A stretch of 64,000 nucleotides of DNA, taken from assembly GCA_000708835.1 (NCBI GenBank), contig DF236964.1:62001-126000 (forward strand). The letters are read 5' to 3'. The notes under the pieces were generated by a model, which worked only from the letters and a program-made list of their open reading frames with translations, was not told where the DNA came from and did not search any database. The translations under genes and the position numbers were made by a program. Below are positions 44,701 to 52,667 of the stretch, piece after piece. Within the stretch, counting starts at the first letter, position 1. Every line of letters starts with the position of its first letter. This DNA comes from Klebsormidium nitens (taxonomy: Eukaryota; Plantae; Klebsormidiophyceae).

Positions 44701-47066
44701 AGTCCGGACAATCTAGGCATCCGAGAAACATCCCGCCCCGCTTTGCTGTCACGTCCAAAGATGATACTTTTGTAGTGCTTTTTCAGTTGCGGTGCGTACT
44801 TCTTGGTCGTTGCAGGATCCAATCACACCACCTGAAAGTCTGCAAAGCCATGGAAACTGAAGTTGACATGTTCACTTTTGGAGGCTGAATGTGGATTGAC
44901 TAACGTCAGCAAGGCGCGCTGACTTGTGTAGCTGAATCGAAGTGAATCCAGCGCCATCTGGTTACAGATATGGCCAAAGAATCTTGATTCTGCCTGAAAG
45001 CAGGTCGGCTAAACCGCAGCAGGACTTGTCAAGCCGTTCTCCAAATGAGAAATCCAGCTTCTTTGCTTTCGAAGCCGTGACTGAACAGATAAACTTACCG
45101 TCCCCAACCGCTTGGCTGCTTGTTACGGTTCGTTTCTTCTTCCTCCCCAGACTCCTATGAAGCTACTCTTTCTGCGCACCAGAGCCGCCAAAGCTGCCAC
45201 GACGGCGCCCATCCGATGCCTCGACTTTTGAGCACTCACCGAAGATAATTCTTCGCTCGCAGGGTTGTATAGAGTTGCTCGACCGCAGCGACATCAAGAT
45301 CGCCGGGAAGCGCGCTGTCGTCCTCGGGCCTCACGATTCACCTATGAGCAATCACAAATATCCTTCTTTATCCTGCAGGGTTGTATAGAGTTGCTCGACC
45401 GCAGCGACATTAAGATCGCCGGGAAGCGCGCGGTCGTCCTCGGGCCTCACGACTCACTTATGAGCAATCACAAATATCCTTCTTTATCCTGCAGGGTTGT
45501 ATAGACTTGCTCGACCGCAGCGGCATCAAGATCGCCGGGAAGCGCGCGGTCGTTCTCGGGCGCAGTAACATCGTGGGCATGCCGGCCGCGCTGCTGCTAC
45601 TGCACCGGGACGCGACGGTGTCGATCGTGCACTCCAAGACGGAGGATCCTGCGAGTATTGTGCGCCAAGCGGACATTGTGATTGCTGCCATTGGGCGACC
45701 AGAGACGGTGAGAGCGCCCTCATTCGGCCATTTTCTGAACTGTACCTGTGCAATCCTGTGCGGCCGTACGGTAGATGGGTGATCATCGTGCATTTCAAGA
45801 CGGAACATCCTGCGAGTATCATGCACCAAGCTGACATCGTGATTGCTGCTATAAGGGGGCCGGGAGAAACGGTGAGGTCGTTTTTTTCGATCCGTAGATC
45901 CAACTATATCTGTTTCGGAAGACTTGACTGTTCTAAATCTTGTGCGGGCAAATGGTAAGGTTTCAAACGGTGGATCTGCCAGTATCGTGCAGGCAACAGT
46001 GAGTGTGATTGCCGCTGTAGGGCCGTTGGAAAGGCGGGGGGTCCCGTAAAAAGCCCTTTCTCGTCGGTGTCTGTCTTCCTTCCCAAATACTTGTGAATGA
46101 CTCCAGGCGGTCCTCTGACAGGCAACGAGAACTTTGAAGTCGGCTGCAACTCTAAAGTTGTCGTTCAACACTGAGAGCTGACTTCACGATTCCTGGTCCA
46201 AGCGACTTCTGCCCCAGAATTTCTTCTTGCCGAAGGGGTCTCAATTAAAAACAGGCTTTCTGAGCGCGCAGTATAAGCGCTGCCCACACATAATGATCAA
46301 AAGTGGTCCAAAACGCCGGAAGGGAACGCGCTTTGTTCCGATTCTGCTTTCCCTTGCCAAGCGACGCTTAGGAACTTCGCCTTCACCGTTCGAAAGTGTC
46401 AAACGATGTCGCTTGCTTTCGAGCCGACTTTCAAGTGGGTCGAAGTACTTTGCTCTTTCACCTCCATGGAGTGCCCGTGGCAGCCTGCGCCTCGGCCGGA
46501 TCTCAGACGTCGTTCTTCCGTACCCGCTGAGTCGAGCGCGAGAGCCCAGATTATGCGCCGCTTTCATCGTTGCCTAGTAGCGTTTCACCCAAAACCTGAA
46601 AACTCCGATCATGATCCGCTCCTGGTCCTTGCTTAGTCGTTTTCCAAAGCGTCTGTCCTTCTCTACTCCCTTCTAAGCACTCCCAAGAGTTCCTTCTGGT
46701 CGTGAAAGACCGGTTGAGGTACGGATGCAGAGGTTACAGAACCCAGTACTTGGCATAGCTCGTTCTAAGTACAACTTTCGCGTGCAGGTACGGGGCGACT
46801 GGATCAAGCCGGGCGCCGCAATCATAGACGTTGGGACGAACGCCGTTGACGACGCCAGCAAGAAAGCCGGTTACCGGCTTGTGGGCGATGTCCATTTTGA
46901 GGAGGCGTCAAAAGTTGCCGGTCATATCACCCCGGTTCCTGGGGGCGTTGGGCCAATGACCATTGCGATGTTGCTTCAGAACACGTTGAACAGTGCTAAG
47001 CGGGTATTGGCAAAGGAGGTGCCGTTAGAGAAGCTGGAGATTCGGCCCAAGCAAGTAGCCGTGTGA
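41705..47066 (+). CDS. FOLD: Bifunctional methylenetetrahydrofolate dehydrogenase/cyclohydrolase (FolD) with an Arg-rich, probably mitochondrial presequence
   Basis: Exons 41705-41742 and 41901-41961 (both tentative), 42225-42356, 43311-43494, 44234-44391, 45495-45707, 46788-47066. Motifs [72 protein letters not shown] and [13 protein letters not shown]. Confidence 0.96.
45247..45494 (+). repeat. Two 116-bp copies of the FolD exon-6 acceptor + exon start
   Basis: CAG|GGTTGTATAGAxTTGCTCGACCGCAGCG... starts at 45263, 45379 and 45495 (the live exon), an exact 116-bp period. Confidence 0.95.
45708..46035 (+). repeat. Copies of the FolD exon-6 3' end + donor
   Basis: 45782-45871 reads [30 protein letters not shown]|GTGAGG, against the live [29 protein letters not shown]|GTGAGA. 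A weaker copy lies at about 45960-46035. Confidence 0.85.
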
Positions 47067-48351
47067 AGTTAGGAAGATTTGAAATTGCATAGCTGTGTTT
47101 GACATGAGGAGTAGGAACCTTGCAACCAGCGCACGACTTCACTGCAACATGTAGAAATTCTTCACAGCCAATTCTCCCGTCCAATTCTTGAATCTTCCAT
47201 ACAATTAGCCTCGACTGCAGGCAGGCAGCCGCCTCTTAATTGCATTCATTCGTTGTAAAGCAAGCAGAAAACCTCGTGTGAGGCGCGTGAAGCACGGACT
47301 CCTGCATACACAATGAGTGTGTTAGTATCAAGACAACCATGCATCCCGCTGCCGGGAGGCCCGCTCCTTGATCCATTGCTATTAAGCCTTGAAGCTTGAA
47401 GCCGGAACTAGATGCGACCAGTCGTGACAACACTGTACGTAAGAAAGCACATCGGGCACGGAAGCGGAGATTGGGCGGCCGACGGTGCTAGCTGCCATTA
47501 TGTCACAAGCATGCAGGTTTACAAGCAGTGCTAGCTTGGCGTTCGCCTTGCAGCCGAGGCTTCATGACGTGCATGGCATGCGATTTTCATAGCCTAGGCC
47601 ACAAGCGCATAACCGAATAACGTATGATGATCATTAATTTCTGGATGCCCACTCCAGAAGGTTCAGTTTCTTCTGTCAATGGTCAATTCTTAGAGCATGC
47701 CAGGAGCGGAGAGACACCAGACCGCGGCCTGGACTGTGATCATGGCAATCATGCACGGGCTTCATGCCAGCGCAGGCGTGAAGCTGTGAAGTTAAATGGT
47801 TGCATCGCTCTAGTTACTCTATTATCCGTTAACCTTTGGGTTATGCCAGTCAGGTTATCTCTTTTACCACTACGGTAGGTATACAAAATTGCATGCGGGA
47901 GATTGGCCAAATTAAGCGGCCGGTTATTGCACGTCCGGTTTCTCATGCTGTTAGGGAACCGGTTCCCCTGATGTCACATGGCGTCTGTATAGTAGTGCTC
48001 CTCTGCTTTTGCGTCGCCAATAAATAGGCCCAGGTGACTAGGACATTTCCCGAACTGAATATATGCGTCAACGCTTCTCCCCGACCGGGGTGACTAATAT
48101 GATATTTCTGACGTCGCTAGAGCCTGAGGTTTCGTTTGAAAATGTGAGGGAGTGCTCAATCTGTGCGGCAAGCTTGCAGCTAGCAGCAGCGACACGATTC
48201 GTGGGTTGGGCGCATAACCACTTGCCCACCGCCTCTGGGCCCTGGTGAGCTGTTTGACATCACATTAGGATCAGGCCTTTACCTGCAAAGCATCGTCCCC
48301 GATGTGGTAGCTGGCGGGCGCCCTCCTGCTTTGTACATCCGGCAAGTAACC

Positions 48352-50289
48352 ATGACAAGCCAATCATCTCTGTCGATAGGGGCGCTCAATTTGGAGGAAG
48401 TGCCTGGGGGGAACGTTCTACGCAAGCTCGATGACAATGTCTTGGAGGCGATCCTGCTCCTCATCACCGACCCGCCCGATCGTGCGGCCTGCTCCCTAAC
48501 TTGCAGAACCTTCATGCAAGCGGAGCGCAACACACGGCAAACCCTCCAGCTGCGCTGCACTCGCGGCATGCTCCACCGCATCCCCCGCTGCTTCCAGGCA
48601 GTAACCGACCTCGACATTTCTAGGGTGATCCCCCGGGGGCAGCGCCCAGTCCTGGTCAGCACCACTCTTGCGCATCTCGCCAAAGGTTTTCCTCAGGTGG
48701 AGACCCTCACAATGTACACCGACTTTGCGCTCGCCGAAGAGGGGCTCGCGCCGCTGATCCGGGCGTGGCCAAACCTGCAGAGCGTTGTCATTCGGAATCC
48801 ACACCCTCGCTGCCTTGAAGGGCGCAAATACAGCGATGTGTGGGAGTCAGTGACGGCGAAAGGTGCGTACAGCGACATGGTCTCTGGCGGTCCCCTGGTG
48901 CTCAAATGGAAGCTCGGTAGTCCACCCCAGCCGTTACCCGGTGGTCTCCTCAATTTCCTGAGGCATTGCTACTTCCGTTGTATAGACCTCAGGATGCTGC
49001 TGGGGTTAAACCCCCCCGATTTGGTATCCCTTGGGGTCGACCTTTGGTATTGCGACGAGAACGTAGACCTTCTATCAAAGTTTACTGGTCTCCAATACTT
49101 GCGCATCTCTGATGATAATCCTGTTCGCCTGGGAGTTGAAGAGAACAGCAGGGCGTGGGGAGTGCTCTCGGACAGCAACTTTGGAAGGCTAGTGAACCGC
49201 CTCTCAAAGCTCAAAACCCTGGAAGTGACTCTTCGCCCCAGCCCCCGGATGACGGAGTTTGTCGTTACCCCCCACCTTGCGGCATCTCTGCGCAACCTGG
49301 TTATCCGCCTAGTGCCAACTGGTTACGCGCCCGATGGCAACTGCTTCAGCTTGAGTTCCATTGCGGCGTGCTCCGCTTTGGAGCGTCTCACATTAGGAGG
49401 GTCGTTAGATCTTTTCCGCCACTTCGAGGCGCTCGTTGACATCAGTGCCAGCTGCCGGCGCCTGGTTGCGCTTAATCTCCCCAACCTCACGAGGCGTCCT
49501 GACGAAACGCATTTGGAATCGGGCGGTGCGGATCTGTTCCGAGCTATGGCTGCAGAGGGGGCGACACTGACCGAACTTCGCGCGTCACGCCTTCCCGCTT
49601 GCGACTCCAGTTTCCCAGAAGGACAGACCGGTCACTTGCTTGACACGTTCACCCCCTTGAGCACAAGACTGAAAAAGCTCACGTGCATCATTCAGCAGGC
49701 CTGCCCAGTTCTCAGCGTTTCTGGCTGGCACGGCCTTGAGCATCTGAACCTGATATGGGGCGTCGACTCTGTTGAGATTCCGCGGATCGAAATAGATTGC
49801 CCCTCGTTGCGGGTTCTGGAACTGCGCGCTGCCCCTCGCGTCCGCCTCGCTTTCTCCCCCGATACCTGCGCTGTCACCTCGTTCACCTTCACACCACGGG
49901 GGTCATCTGCCAACCCGTTCGACGGGGACACGCTCGCTCTCCTCTTGGATGGGCTCTCAGCCGCCTTTCCTGCGCTGTCCGACGTCTCTCTATCTGGCGG
50001 TGCGTGTCAAGGAGATTACCGTCCCCCCAATCGCAGCGACGAGAAGCTCTGGCAAGATGAGCTCGTGCTAGAGGCCCTTGCGCAGTTCCCCTCACTGCGA
50101 CGCTTGTCTCTCAATGGTGGGAAGTTCACAGTCTCGCTCAATGACGAGCGTGCTCTGGATGACTTCAGCAACCGCATCCGCCTGCTGCTGCGCTGTCCCA
50201 AGCTGACGTCACTGAAGGTCCCTGCGATGTACGAGCACGTCCTCGAGCAGTCGTTTTACGAGGAACTGTACGGGCGTGGGGGGGCCTGA
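48352..50289 (+). CDS. Intronless F-box/LRR protein, MAX2/D3-like
   Basis: Single 645-aa ORF from the first ATG. It has an N-terminal F-box (LDDNVLEAILLLITDPPDRAACSLTCRTF) followed by ERNTRQTLQLR, IPRCFQAVTDLDIS, FPQVETLTMY, WPNL, WHGLEHLNL, DCPSL and ACQGDYRP. These are collinear with the corresponding segments of Arabidopsis MAX2 as I recall them. Confidence 0.8.
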   Translation: MTSQSSLSIGALNLEEVPGGNVLRKLDDNVLEAILLLITDPPDRAACSLTCRTFMQAERNTRQTLQLRCTRGMLHRIPRCFQAVTDLDISRVIPRGQRPVLVSTTLAHLAKGFPQVETLTMYTDFALAEEGLAPLIRAWPNLQSVVIRNPHPRCLEGRKYSDVWESVTAKGAYSDMVSGGPLVLKWKLGSPPQPLPGGLLNFLRHCYFRCIDLRMLLGLNPPDLVSLGVDLWYCDENVDLLSKFTGLQYLRISDDNPVRLGVEENSRAWGVLSDSNFGRLVNRLSKLKTLEVTLRPSPRMTEFVVTPHLAASLRNLVIRLVPTGYAPDGNCFSLSSIAACSALERLTLGGSLDLFRHFEALVDISASCRRLVALNLPNLTRRPDETHLESGGADLFRAMAAEGATLTELRASRLPACDSSFPEGQTGHLLDTFTPLSTRLKKLTCIIQQACPVLSVSGWHGLEHLNLIWGVDSVEIPRIEIDCPSLRVLELRAAPRVRLAFSPDTCAVTSFTFTPRGSSANPFDGDTLALLLDGLSAAFPALSDVSLSGGACQGDYRPPNRSDEKLWQDELVLEALAQFPSLRRLSLNGGKFTVSLNDERALDDFSNRIRLLLRCPKLTSLKVPAMYEHVLEQSFYEELYGRGGA

Positions 50290-52667
50290 GGCGGGTGAAC
50301 CTAGGTCAGGGTTTAAACCCAAAAAGGTAAGGGTCGCTTCGACTTTCATAACCACTCTTTTACTGACAAGCTGCGTGCTCTAGCCGAAAATGGGCTCCCG
50401 GGGGACGCTTGTTATGGTTAGAAAGATGCTGAGAGGATCAAAGGGTTTGGAAATGGTTTGGTTCGTTGGTTTCCGAGTCGCAGTCGTTTAACGAGGAGGT
50501 GTATGTTTCACAGAGGGTGCAGCCTGATCCGGAATGTGTCTCGAGAAAGACCGGGTCGAGAAGTAAGCCAAGGGCTTAAGATGAGCCCGAGTTTTTCTCG
50601 TCATTCTTAGGAGGTTTGCTTACTCCTCCTTGGGAGTCTGCTGTAACACCAAAGCAACCCCACTGTCCTCCGTGCGCCAGCGTTACGTCACATGTCTGTT
50701 GCACGAAGGTTGCTAGATTTTCTAGATTGCCTAAATCCAATGTCGAATTTAAGCCACATGTCTTTTGAGAGTCTGAACCCATTCCAAACCGTAAGTCCAC
50801 GTAATTCTTGCTGCAGGCACAGGCACTCACTTGCCATCCACTGCGGTTGGCAAAAGGTGGTCCAGGTGATAAGGACCGGGCGTCCTTTGCGCTGCTTCCG
50901 CTAGGATTCTTCGGGGCTTACTTTCGCTAGGTATGCAGTCCGTAAGGTTGCCCTTAATTCCAGGATTTGTGGGGGGGGGAAATGATTGGCCTTCGTCGTT
51001 GCTGTATTTAACAGTCACTATCTTTGCAGTCTTTGTTTTATTTCCCGTGATAATCAATATCCTAACATGAACAGCCGCGCCGACGTTGCATGCGCAAGGA
51101 AGTGTCTTTACGTCCCGCACGGTCATTGCGAGCTAGCCTGCTAGTTGTGGGCACAGTGATGCATGACACAGTAACTTGCTTCAAATTCGGCCCCCGAGTG
51201 AATCACTGAGCTTGGTGGCCCGCCACAACCTCATGCATGATTAACAATATCATGTATGCTTCTAATCTTCATACATGTCTCCAATTGAAGCTGCATGATT
51301 GTGATGCATGCCAGAGTAGGAATTGTTCCTATTTGATCCTGACTGTCACGGTCCAGCTAGACGCTTACTTGAGATTTTGCTTAATTGGGCCCTTAGGCCG
51401 GTGCTGCAGCGCCGGGGCAAGCTCGTCAATGATCGATCAAGTACATGGCATCATTAAGCACAAATACACGGAGATGATATCAGCTGATTTCTTCGTCTCT
51501 TTTCGTATGGTATGACTTCATAGCCGCCCGCGCGTGACGGGACGGTGTGGTCACGAGCCAAAAATTCAGTGCCGCATTGAACAGTAAAGCACGGCTATCA
51601 TATACTCATTCCACGCAGATCGAGTTTGTGCGAGCCGCGCGCTGGTTGTATAAGCATAGGACGAAGAGCCATTCACGCCCCAGGGTGTGCCCTGCTGCAA
51701 CATGATCACATGAAAGCACAGCTAACCAAGCCTGGTAATTATACACCTGATGCATGATGTTGGTTGAATGGAATTCATAGTCACTCATTATTAGGGTAGC
51801 TGGGATGTCCAGCTTGTGAAAAGCAAGGATGAAGTTGTAATGCAATGATACACCATGGCACCGGGTGAGTGCCCTTCTGGGGCCCTTAGGTCAGTAGTAG
51901 ACCGGTCGCATGCTGGAAACACCTTCTTATAAGCAGGCTTGATTGAGAATGCAGCCAACCCTTGATGAGCCACAAAACGTATCAACGGCCATGCACGCGA
52001 ATTCCTGGCCGAAGCTTATTTGGCATGCATGGCAGCTGGGCGATGCGACTCAGCTCCTAACTAGCCAAGACCAGGCCTCTATGTCCTGCAAATCCCAAGT
52101 TCTTCAACTCGAAAACGAAAACATGCTGCTCGTCATATCCTGAAGATGGTAATTCTCTTGAAAGCGTCATGTATTCAGCTGTCAAGCGAGAGAAGCGTTG
52201 TGGAGCAACTATATAGTCTGTCTGTCGAGGCAGCGTACAAAAGCAGAGCCGCGTCTCGATTACAGTGCGTGCGTGCTCAAACATATTGCCCGAGAGTCTC
52301 TGAAGTTGTTTAAGTACGTTTATCGTATCTGCACCTATGGGGCACCTATACTCGGGCTGGGCCACACGTGTCAAAAAACGAGTAAAAAGCTTCTAAGACC
52401 CTTTCCGGACGCTTTCGGACCCTTTTCGGCCGCTTTTCAAACGCATGTTTTGGACCCCAACGGCCTGCAGACTCTCTTTTTTAAAGATCTCTTCGGCTTT
52501 TGGTTGAGCAGATGAGCACCCTCTGATTGACAAAGGCCTCCTTCAGCCAAGTCGACGATTGCGGCGCCAGCTCAGGTATAGCCTCAGTCCATCAGTGTGG
52601 CCCGGCAGTCCTGCAGGGAGGCAAAGACGCGCGGCAGATGAGGGTCAACGGTAACTACAGGAGTTTT

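What the first reader, a model, noticed from the sequence alone, without database searches (positions are those of the whole stretch)
48352..50289. MAX2/D3-like F-box LRR gene in an apparently algal streptophyte genome
Segments are collinear with Arabidopsis MAX2 as recalled, along most of the length: ERNTRQTLQLR/ERSTRSHLTIR, IPRCFQAVTDLDIS/VPDCFRSISHLDLS, FPQVETLTMY/FPFVESLNVY, WPNLQSV..RNPHPR/WPRIRHI..RWHQR, PLSTRLKKL/PICDRIKRL, WHGLEHLNL/WEKLEYLSL, DCPSL/DCPNL, GACQGDYRP...LEALAQFPSL/GDCRGKRRP...LSCLALYPKL. The fit is better than to TIR1 or COI1. MAX2 is the SCF adaptor for karrikin/KAI2 and strigolactone/D14 signalling, and my recollection (unverified) is that clear homologues are scarce in early-diverging charophytes. 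A divergent homologue would bear on the origin of this pathway.
Basis: partly seen in the sequence, partly recalled or inferred. Interest (0 to 1): 0.8.

Follow-up and report, generated by a model that had tools for sequence, protein, structure and literature searches.

The report
Divergent MAX2-like F-box gene in Klebsormidium
This is an expressed gene of the alga Klebsormidium nitens for an F-box/leucine-rich-repeat protein whose first ~140 residues clearly resemble the plant hormone-signalling protein MAX2, but it belongs to a multi-copy, fast-diverging Klebsormidium family and lacks MAX2's conserved receptor-binding end, so it is a distant cousin, not a proven MAX2.

Summary
Window 48352-50289 (+) is one uninterrupted 645-codon ORF, the K. 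nitens gene KFL_000150170. It is transcribed.

MAX2/D3 is the nearest known family:
- The profile of this protein's family scores 54-76 bits against solved MAX2 chains, against 32 for COI1 and 25 for TIR1.
- The top 14 Foldseek hits are all MAX2/D3, also with a model built without MAX2 sequences.

The MAX2-specific sequence signal is confined to residues 21-157 (F-box plus LRR1-3). The rest matches generic LRR proteins equally well. MAX2's conserved C-terminal block is not kept (6 of 55 columns).

The gene sits in a well-supported clade of many paralogues, about 26-30% identical to it. At least three are annotated in K. nitens, one of them broken, and at least seven occur in one related alga. 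Canonical MAX2, by contrast, is described in the literature as single-copy. Placement relative to TIR1/COI1 could not be tested.

Published work had already judged Klebsormidium "MAX2-like" sequences only weakly similar. First readers of this scan also flagged four similar genes elsewhere in this genome.

Separately, RNA contigs do not support the annotated C-terminus.

The parts
48170..48351 (+). 5' UTR. RNA contigs begin at 48169-48189. It contains a 2-codon uORF (ATG TGG TAG) at 48302-48310.
   Evidence: Contig ends in four runs; sequence read directly.
48352..50289 (+). Intronless coding sequence of 645 aa plus stop (KFL_000150170, with corrected C-terminus).
   Evidence: ORF list. Identity to P0001 over aa 1-588. 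RNA contigs cross 48189-50324 without a gap.
48427..48540 (+). F-box (aa 26-63), Pfam F-box_5, the type shared by TIR1, COI1 and MAX2. Presumed SKP1-binding module.
   Evidence: PF18511, E 2.5e-9, 37 bits, cut-off 25.5. Alignment to the COI1 F-box.
48412..48822 (+). MAX2-type N-terminal module (aa 21-157): F-box plus LRR1-3, with the motifs ER.TR..L.LR, P.CF..V..LD.S, FP.V..L..Y and WP.L.
   Evidence: MAX2 HMM 84.7 bits; MAX2 N-module HMM 84 bits. 28 of 41 MAX2-conserved columns are identical.
48541..50217 (+). Leucine-rich-repeat solenoid (aa 64-622). I count about 20 strand-defined repeats. Disordered loops lie at aa 155-180 and 552-557.
   Evidence: AlphaFold2 models, pLDDT 80 and 74. Superposition on rice D3.
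50224..50274 (+). C-terminal capping helices (aa 625-641), including the family-conserved motif FYEELYG (aa 635-641, nt 50254-50274).
   Evidence: DSSP of the models. Y636 and Y640 are invariant in six family members.
50327..50816 (+). 490-nt GT..AG intron in the 3' UTR, starting 37 nt after the stop codon. Unspliced contigs are also present.
   Evidence: Joint 50324->50815 (cut +2) in runs X1, X3 and X10; sequence.
50817..51115 (+). Second 3' UTR exon. RNA contigs end at 51053-51115.
   Evidence: table 8.
50117..50235 (+). Stretch treated as a 119-nt intron in the deposited model KFL_000150170. RNA contigs do not support it; it is coding sequence.
   Evidence: Model compared with the ORF. Contigs of four runs cover the stretch, in three of them crossing it entirely, with no joint. 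The C-terminus read straight through is conserved in the family.

Best explanation
What it is. KFL_000150170 encodes the substrate adaptor of an SCF ubiquitin ligase. It has an N-terminal F-box that should dock on SKP1, followed by a solenoid of about 20 LRRs with a C-terminal helix that should bind targets.

Where it belongs. It is a member of a Klebsormidium-restricted multigene family evolving by birth and death. The family shares with MAX2/D3 a specific N-terminal module (F-box plus LRR1-3) and the overall architecture. It therefore most likely descends from the same ancestral gene lineage as MAX2. Its LRR surface and C-terminus have diverged beyond recognition.

Likely function. The paralogues probably recognise different partners. 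There is no positive evidence that this one couples to the KAI2-like receptor.

Shown: ORF, expression, domain content, family membership, nearest family. Inferred: SKP1 binding, E3 function, common ancestry with MAX2 to the exclusion of TIR1/COI1, diversified specificity.
For: Gene and expression.
- The ORF is intact and transcribed. Contigs that hold it occur in 18 runs from 6 studies, and they carry a spliced 3' UTR intron, which shows they are RNA.
- F-box_5 domain.

Nearest family is MAX2.
- An exhaustive phmmer search of 1.84 billion proteins gave only 50 hits. They were full-length relatives of 26-30% identity plus canonical MAX2 proteins hit over aa ~22-155. Of the 30 hits looked up, none was named TIR1 or COI1, and the other non-family hits are MAX2-like by BLAST.
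- Family profile against PDB chains: MAX2 76, 61 and 54 bits; COI1 32; TIR1 25.
- hhalign, family against MAX2: probability 99.5%, E 2.7e-23.
- Foldseek: the top 14 hits are all MAX2/D3. E is 3e-17 with a mixed MSA and 1e-14 with a family-only MSA. TIR1/COI1 give 2e-10 and 2e-6.
- VIA-align: D3 at Z 24.6, rmsd 3.9 Å, 497 residues, model 19-645 onto D3 13-720.
- Among the K. nitens proteins available, this one scores best against a MAX2 HMM: 96 bits, against 73.5 and 58.9.

Multigene family.
- K. nitens paralogues are KFL_000900220, KFL_003030160 and the more distant KFL_001930100.
- At least 7 family members come from one run, SRR23617307. That organism is a close relative of K. nitens: 78-86% nucleotide identity, dS ~0.7.
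- The clade has 100/99 support.
- One orthologous pair is under purifying selection: dN/dS 0.13 in the N-terminal half and 0.28 in the C-terminal half.
- One K. nitens copy carries a frameshift and a stop.
Against: - No TIR1/AFB, COI1 or EBF sequences could be put in the tree. A common origin with MAX2 to the exclusion of those families therefore rests on score differences, not on a rooted phylogeny. In the tree the relation between this family, canonical MAX2 and a zygnematophyte MAX2-like clade is unresolved.
- The LRR part is no closer to MAX2 than to generic LRR proteins by sequence.
- By global shape it matches generic LRR solenoids as well as it matches MAX2, at TM ~0.6.
- A language-model search ranks MAX2 and COI1 equally, at ranks 29 and 28.
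- No orthologue of this particular gene was recovered, so constraint on it is inferred only from the intact ORF and expression.
- SKP1 binding was not tested.
Confidence: 0.6

Rival explanations
1. It is the functional MAX2 orthologue of Klebsormidium. As an SCF adaptor it is recruited by the alga's KAI2-like receptor, as in karrikin/KL signalling.
For: MAX2 is the nearest family. This gene is the best K. nitens match to a MAX2 HMM. Its N-module scores as high as those of the zygnematophyte MAX2-like proteins. Klebsormidiales have a KAI2-like protein and no canonical MAX2 (PMC5490202).
Against: Only 6 of 55 MAX2-conserved C-terminal columns are kept, and only 2 across the family. The invariant terminal Asp of MAX2 is missing, and family C-termini vary after the LYGH motif. 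The family is multi-copy and fast-evolving, unlike single-copy MAX2 (PMC5490202). SMXL targets are reported absent from algae (PMC6728956). [quoted passage not shown]
Confidence: 0.12
2. It is a generic lineage-specific F-box-LRR protein with no special kinship to MAX2. The N-terminal likeness only reflects the shared F-box_5 superfamily that also holds TIR1, COI1 and FBL proteins.
For: Sequence similarity of the LRR part is generic. Shape matches are generic. The language-model neighbours are generic F-box proteins. The family is a lineage-specific expansion.
Against: The similarity extends beyond the F-box into LRR1-3. There, 17 of 23 MAX2-conserved columns are identical, and the COI1 and TIR1 alignments stop. 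The MAX2 N-module HMM gives 84 bits, against 29 for a generic Chara F-box_5 LRR protein. All 14 top Foldseek hits are MAX2/D3, even with a family-only MSA.
Confidence: 0.2
3. It is a decaying or non-functional family member.
For: At least one paralogue in the same genome is broken. Earlier notes of this scan mention two disabled copies.
Against: The ORF of 645 codons is intact in 58% G+C DNA. Spliced mRNA contigs occur in several studies. Family-invariant residues are kept along the whole length.
Confidence: 0.03

Closest known systems
MAX2 / D3 (F-box/LRR-repeat MAX2 homolog; PDB 5HZG, 6BRP, 6BRQ, 9KKX)
   Same: Same type of F-box (F-box_5). A shared conserved F-box-to-LRR3 module with the same motifs in the same order. 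About 20 LRRs ending in a C-terminal helix. End-to-end structural superposition (Z 24.6, 497 residues). Best PDB match by both sequence and structure.
   Different: No significant MAX2-specific sequence signal after aa ~157. It lacks MAX2's acidic insert. The conserved C-terminal block (the RKLF.HGT..EH and LRDVQLR.DYYPAP motifs, and the terminal Asp) is not kept. The family is multi-copy and fast-evolving instead of single-copy and conservative.
Zygnematophyte MAX2-like proteins (Spirogloea SM000217S06836 = P0047, three copies; Closterium CLOM_g15308 = P0037)
   Same: They are non-canonical relatives of MAX2 in streptophyte algae. Their N-module scores against the MAX2 HMM are similar: 72-81 bits, against 84 here.
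   Different: Those proteins match the MAX2 HMM along the whole length (258 bits, two long stretches). They form their own clade with 100/100 support. The Klebsormidium family does not match along the whole length.
TIR1/AFB and COI1 hormone co-receptors
   Same: F-box_5 F-box followed by an LRR solenoid. The COI1 F-box aligns to aa 28-88.
   Different: Much weaker profile scores, 32 and 25 bits. No Transp_inhibit domain was found. Foldseek E-values are 7-8 orders of magnitude worse than for MAX2. Neither is among the top 50 by VIA Z.
Lineage-specific F-box family expansions of plants (birth-and-death evolution; general knowledge)
   Same: Many paralogues confined to one lineage, high divergence between copies, the C-terminal half less constrained than the N-terminal half, and pseudogenised copies.
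   Different: Here the expanded family derives from the otherwise strictly single-copy MAX2-type lineage, if the inferred kinship is right.

Membership tests
MAX2/D3 | N-terminal F-box of the F-box_5 type | tested here: met
   PF18511, E 2.5e-9, 37 bits, above the 25.5 cut-off, at aa 26-63.
MAX2/D3 | MAX2-specific conservation of the F-box-to-LRR3 module | tested here: met
   MAX2 HMM 84.7 bits over aa 21-157. 28 of 41 columns that are >=90% conserved in MAX2 are identical. A generic Chara F-box_5 LRR protein scores only 29 bits.
MAX2/D3 | Sequence similarity to MAX2 along the LRR domain, above that to unrelated LRR proteins | tested here: not met
   The MAX2 HMM adds 8 bits after aa 157. The family's LRR part gives E 1.1e-7 against the MAX2 profile, 1e-7 against Chara P0034 and 2-3e-5 against generic LRR proteins.
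MAX2/D3 | Architecture: about 20 LRRs plus a C-terminal helix, superposable on D3 | tested here: met
   Models with pLDDT 80 and 74. D3 at Z 24.6, 497 residues aligned end to end. Top 14 Foldseek hits are all MAX2/D3 in both models. Caveat: generic LRR solenoids reach a similar TM.
MAX2/D3 | Conserved C-terminal block and C-terminal helix ending in an invariant Asp. From general knowledge of the D3 structures, this is the region that engages D14/KAI2 and SMXL. | tested here: not met
   6 of 55 conserved columns are identical here, and 2 are conserved across the family. The protein ends in GRGGA, and family tails vary. MAX2 ends in an invariant D. The alignment in this region is uncertain.
MAX2/D3 | Single-copy, slowly evolving orthologue in each species (PMC5490202, section 14) | tested here: not met
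   At least 3 family members plus one distant relative are annotated in K. nitens. At least 7 occur in one related alga. Copies are 26-30% identical to this one.
MAX2/D3 | Phylogenetic position inside or sister to MAX2, with TIR1/COI1/EBF outside | tested here: inconclusive
   A 28-row ML tree recovers the three clades, but the relation between them is unresolved. No TIR1/COI1/EBF rows were available by reference.
MAX2/D3 | Binds SKP1 and a KAI2/D14-type receptor; max2 complementation | not testable with these tools
Experiments are needed.
TIR1/AFB-COI1 | F-box_5 plus Transp_inhibit domain and full-length similarity to TIR1/COI1 | tested here: not met
   No PF18791 hit. COI1 and TIR1 match only the F-box, at 32 and 25 bits.

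The most novel reading that the evidence does not exclude
The Klebsormidium family is the co-orthologue set of MAX2. On this reading the MAX2 lineage arose before Klebsormidiophyceae split from the line leading to land plants, which is earlier than the Coleochaete record in the literature. KFL_000150170, the copy most like MAX2, would still be recruited by the alga's KAI2-like receptor in an SMXL-independent pathway.
Probability: 0.12. Interest if true: 0.8.

Novelty: new variant of a known kind. Interest (0 to 1): 0.4.

Why it matters
When KAI2 receptors became coupled to an SCF-MAX2 ligase is an open question. Klebsormidium has a KAI2-like protein but, according to the literature, no MAX2.

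This work makes three points. The alga does carry true structural and N-terminal homologues of MAX2. They are a diversified multigene family, not one orthologue. The part of MAX2 that meets its receptor is not conserved in them.

That gives a short list of concrete candidates for interaction and complementation tests, this gene first. It also tempers any claim that the pathway is present. Separately, the deposited gene model needs a corrected C-terminus.

Tried and rejected
- Word-index protein search, with the protein and with the family alignment: found only the gene itself. The third allowed search was left unused as unlikely to help.
- Outgroup sequences: no TIR1/AFB, COI1 or EBF sequence could be obtained under a reference. 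The tree therefore has no proper outgroup.
- Wang et al. 2015 (PMC4348752), the source of the earlier 'MAX2-like in K. flaccidum' claim, is not held. The gene identifier appears in no held paper. I therefore could not confirm that this gene is one of their candidates.
- Synteny between this locus and family loci of the related alga: none beyond the gene itself.
Residue-level statements about the C-terminus are therefore tentative.
- Shuffled-column null for hhalign: rejected as too lenient, because it destroys LRR periodicity. Replaced by real LRR controls.
- ESM Atlas searches by features and by shape: generic F-box/LRR neighbours, not discriminating.
- The deposited C-terminus, which needs an intron at 50117-50235: rejected.

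Full report
**The gene**

Window 48304..50289 (+) is the only long ORF in the region. The first ATG is at 48352, giving 645 aa. The region has 58% G+C, against about 50% around it.

The word-index search returned one protein, KFL_000150170 of Klebsormidium nitens (P0001, 647 aa). It is identical to the ORF over aa 1-588 and then diverges. So the window is K. nitens DNA.

The deposited model reaches its different C-terminus by removing 50117-50235 as an intron, which shifts the frame.

**Expression and gene model**

Contig sets of 18 public runs from 6 studies hold the stretch. I laid four runs from four studies on 47900-51200.
- Contigs start at 48169-48189.
- They run without any gap through the whole ORF to 50324-50327.
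- In three runs they then join 50324->50815, a skip of 490 nt with GT..AG ends.

Read on the sequence, the intron is 50327-50816. It starts 37 nt after the stop codon at 50287-50289. The splice shows that these contigs are RNA.

No joint exists at 50117-50235. The straight-through C-terminus carries a motif, FYE.LYG, whose two tyrosines are invariant in all six full-length family members. I conclude that the product is the 645-aa ORF and that the deposited C-terminus is wrong. Contigs can miss rare isoforms, so this shows the main form only.

The 5' UTR holds a two-codon uORF at 48302-48310.

**What it resembles by sequence**

Pfam finds only F-box_5 (aa 26-63, E 2.5e-9) and no Transp_inhibit domain.

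Against PDB sequences, the single protein hits a 771-aa 'F-box protein', 9kkx_C, which is Striga MAX2. The hit has E 5.7e-9 over aa 22-152. COI1 is hit at E 8.7e-4 over the F-box only.

The exhaustive phmmer search of 1.84 billion cluster representatives gave only 50 hits at E <= 1e-3. All-against-all BLAST splits most of them into two main sets.
- Full-length relatives of 26-30% identity. I call these the K-clade here.
- Canonical MAX2 proteins, hit only over aa ~22-155. They include Melia MAX2, Selaginella MAX2 homolog A, a Diphasiastrum protein that is MAX2-like by BLAST, and Spirogloea SM000161S02418.

None of the 30 hits I looked up is named TIR1 or COI1.

A profile of six K-clade proteins scores 76, 61 and 54 bits on MAX2/D3 chains, 32 on COI1 and 25 on TIR1. 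hhalign of that profile against ten MAX2 proteins gives probability 99.5%, E 2.7e-23, over 395 columns.

In the reverse direction, a MAX2 HMM gives this protein 96 bits, the best of the K. nitens proteins at hand. KFL_001930100 scores 73.5 and KFL_000900220 scores 58.9.

**Where the MAX2 signal sits**

Of the 96 bits, 84.7 come from aa 21-157. Of the columns that are at least 90% conserved in MAX2, the protein keeps:
- 11 of 18 in the F-box;
- 17 of 23 in LRR1-3;
- 6 of 55 in the C-terminal 130 residues, with only 2 of these conserved across the K-clade.

With the N-terminus cut away, the K-clade LRR part still aligns collinearly with MAX2, at E 1.1e-7.

However, the same query scores E 1e-7 against a Chara F-box-LRR protein that is not MAX2-like, and 2-3e-5 against generic LRR proteins. 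The similarity 'along most of the length' is therefore real as collinearity, but it is not specific evidence for MAX2 beyond aa ~157.

MAX2 ends in an invariant Asp. This protein ends in GRGGA, and family tails vary after LYGH.

**Structure**

AlphaFold2 with a mixed MSA gave pLDDT 80 and pTM 0.80. A control with K-clade sequences only gave pLDDT 74. Both models show an F-box, about 20 strand-defined repeats (my count) and C-terminal helices.

In Foldseek against the PDB, the first 14 hits are all MAX2/D3 for both models.
- Mixed MSA: MAX2/D3 at E 3e-17 to 1e-11; TIR1/COI1 from 2e-10.
- Family-only MSA: MAX2/D3 at E 1e-14 to 9e-10; TIR1/COI1 from 2e-6.

The preference for MAX2 is therefore not an artefact of putting MAX2 sequences in the MSA.

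VIA-align superposes 497 residues on rice D3 at rmsd 3.9 Å, Z 24.6, model 19-645 onto D3 13-720. Generic LRR proteins reach Z 17-22 over about 350 residues or fewer. TIR1 and COI1 are not in the top 50.

Against this, global shape alone is not distinctive. Atlas models of generic LRR proteins reach TM 0.57-0.60. The language-model search lists MAX2 and COI1 side by side, at ranks 29 and 28.

**A multigene family**

P0002, P0003, P0004, P0005, P0006, P0010 and P0020 all come from one DNA run, SRR23617307. Six of them are uninterrupted ORFs of 501-667 aa; P0010 is a 304-aa fragment.

That organism is a close relative of K. nitens.
- The P0006 locus is 77.7% identical in DNA to the K. nitens locus of KFL_000900220.
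- Both loci have a neighbouring P450 gene, whose exon is 86.5% identical between them.
- dS is about 0.7.

Named K. nitens members are KFL_000900220 (P0007), KFL_003030160 (P0021) and the more distant KFL_001930100 (P0066).

In an ML tree of 28 rows:
- the K-clade is monophyletic (100/99), and this gene sits on its own long branch;
- KFL_001930100 joins it (96/90), and then a metagenomic protein (92/88);
- canonical MAX2 (99/99) and a zygnematophyte MAX2-like pair (100/100) are separate clades;
- the relation among the three groups is unresolved, and no TIR1/COI1 outgroup was available.

The P0006/KFL_000900220 pair shows purifying selection that is weaker in the C-terminal half (dN/dS 0.13 and 0.28). 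The K. nitens copy carries a frameshift and an in-frame stop.

First readers of this scan had flagged four other 'MAX2/D3-like F-box-LRR' genes elsewhere in this genome, two of them as disabled. I treat these notes as leads only. One may be the broken locus I examined.

**Literature**

Bythell-Douglas et al. [quoted passage not shown] They judged earlier BLAST-retrieved candidates (Wang et al. 2015) 'only very weakly similar' (PMC5490202, section 14). Walker et al. 2019 report that SMXL proteins are absent from algae (PMC6728956). A MAX2 orthologue is reported for Penium (10.1101/835561). I could not read Wang et al. 2015, so I cannot say whether this gene was among their candidates.

**Conclusion**

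The gene most likely encodes an SCF adaptor of a Klebsormidium-specific family. That family shares ancestry with MAX2, shown by the N-terminal module and the architecture, but it has diversified in copy number and in its binding surfaces.

The gene does fall in a lineage-specific expansion, yet that expansion's nearest known relative is MAX2.

Nothing here supports a conserved KAI2-MAX2 pairing in Klebsormidium, and nothing excludes it. I put that reading at about 0.12.

Noticed in passing
window 50117-50235 and 50290-50900: The deposited model KFL_000150170 (P0001) removes a 119-nt 'intron' inside the ORF and reads on in another frame through the real stop codon. That gives 59 unrelated C-terminal residues. 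RNA contigs of four runs do not support this.
   Followed up: yes
window 50327-50816: A 490-nt 3' UTR intron starts 37 nt after the stop codon. Spliced and unspliced contigs coexist in the same runs: in X1, depth is 10.5 spliced and 8.5 unspliced.
   Followed up: partly
window 48302-48310: A two-codon upstream ORF (ATG TGG TAG) lies in the 5' UTR, 42 nt before the start codon.
   Followed up: no
L006:2001-3892 (K. nitens DF237039.1, KFL_000900220): This paralogue, compared with its intact orthologue P0006, has a frameshift near aa 300 and an in-frame stop about 50 codons before the end. The deposited 448-aa model bypasses them with introns. It is probably a pseudogene or an assembly error.
   Followed up: partly
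P0047/P0068/P0069 (Spirogloea muscicola, 641 aa) and P0037 (Closterium sp., 1124 aa): Zygnematophytes carry a second MAX2-like lineage. It matches a MAX2 HMM along its whole length (258-263 bits for the Spirogloea proteins) but forms its own clade. In Spirogloea it sits beside a canonical MAX2 (P0024). This looks like an old duplication, whereas the literature describes MAX2 as having no long-standing duplications.
   Followed up: partly
L007:141-1848 (SRR23617307): A family member is called as two overlapping ORFs of 304 and 270 aa. It is possibly another frameshifted copy.
   Followed up: no
window 46725-47066: The upstream neighbour on the same strand includes an exon of a FolD-type methylenetetrahydrofolate dehydrogenase/cyclohydrolase. 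I recognised it from the translation only. Another note of this scan concerns one of its introns.
   Followed up: no
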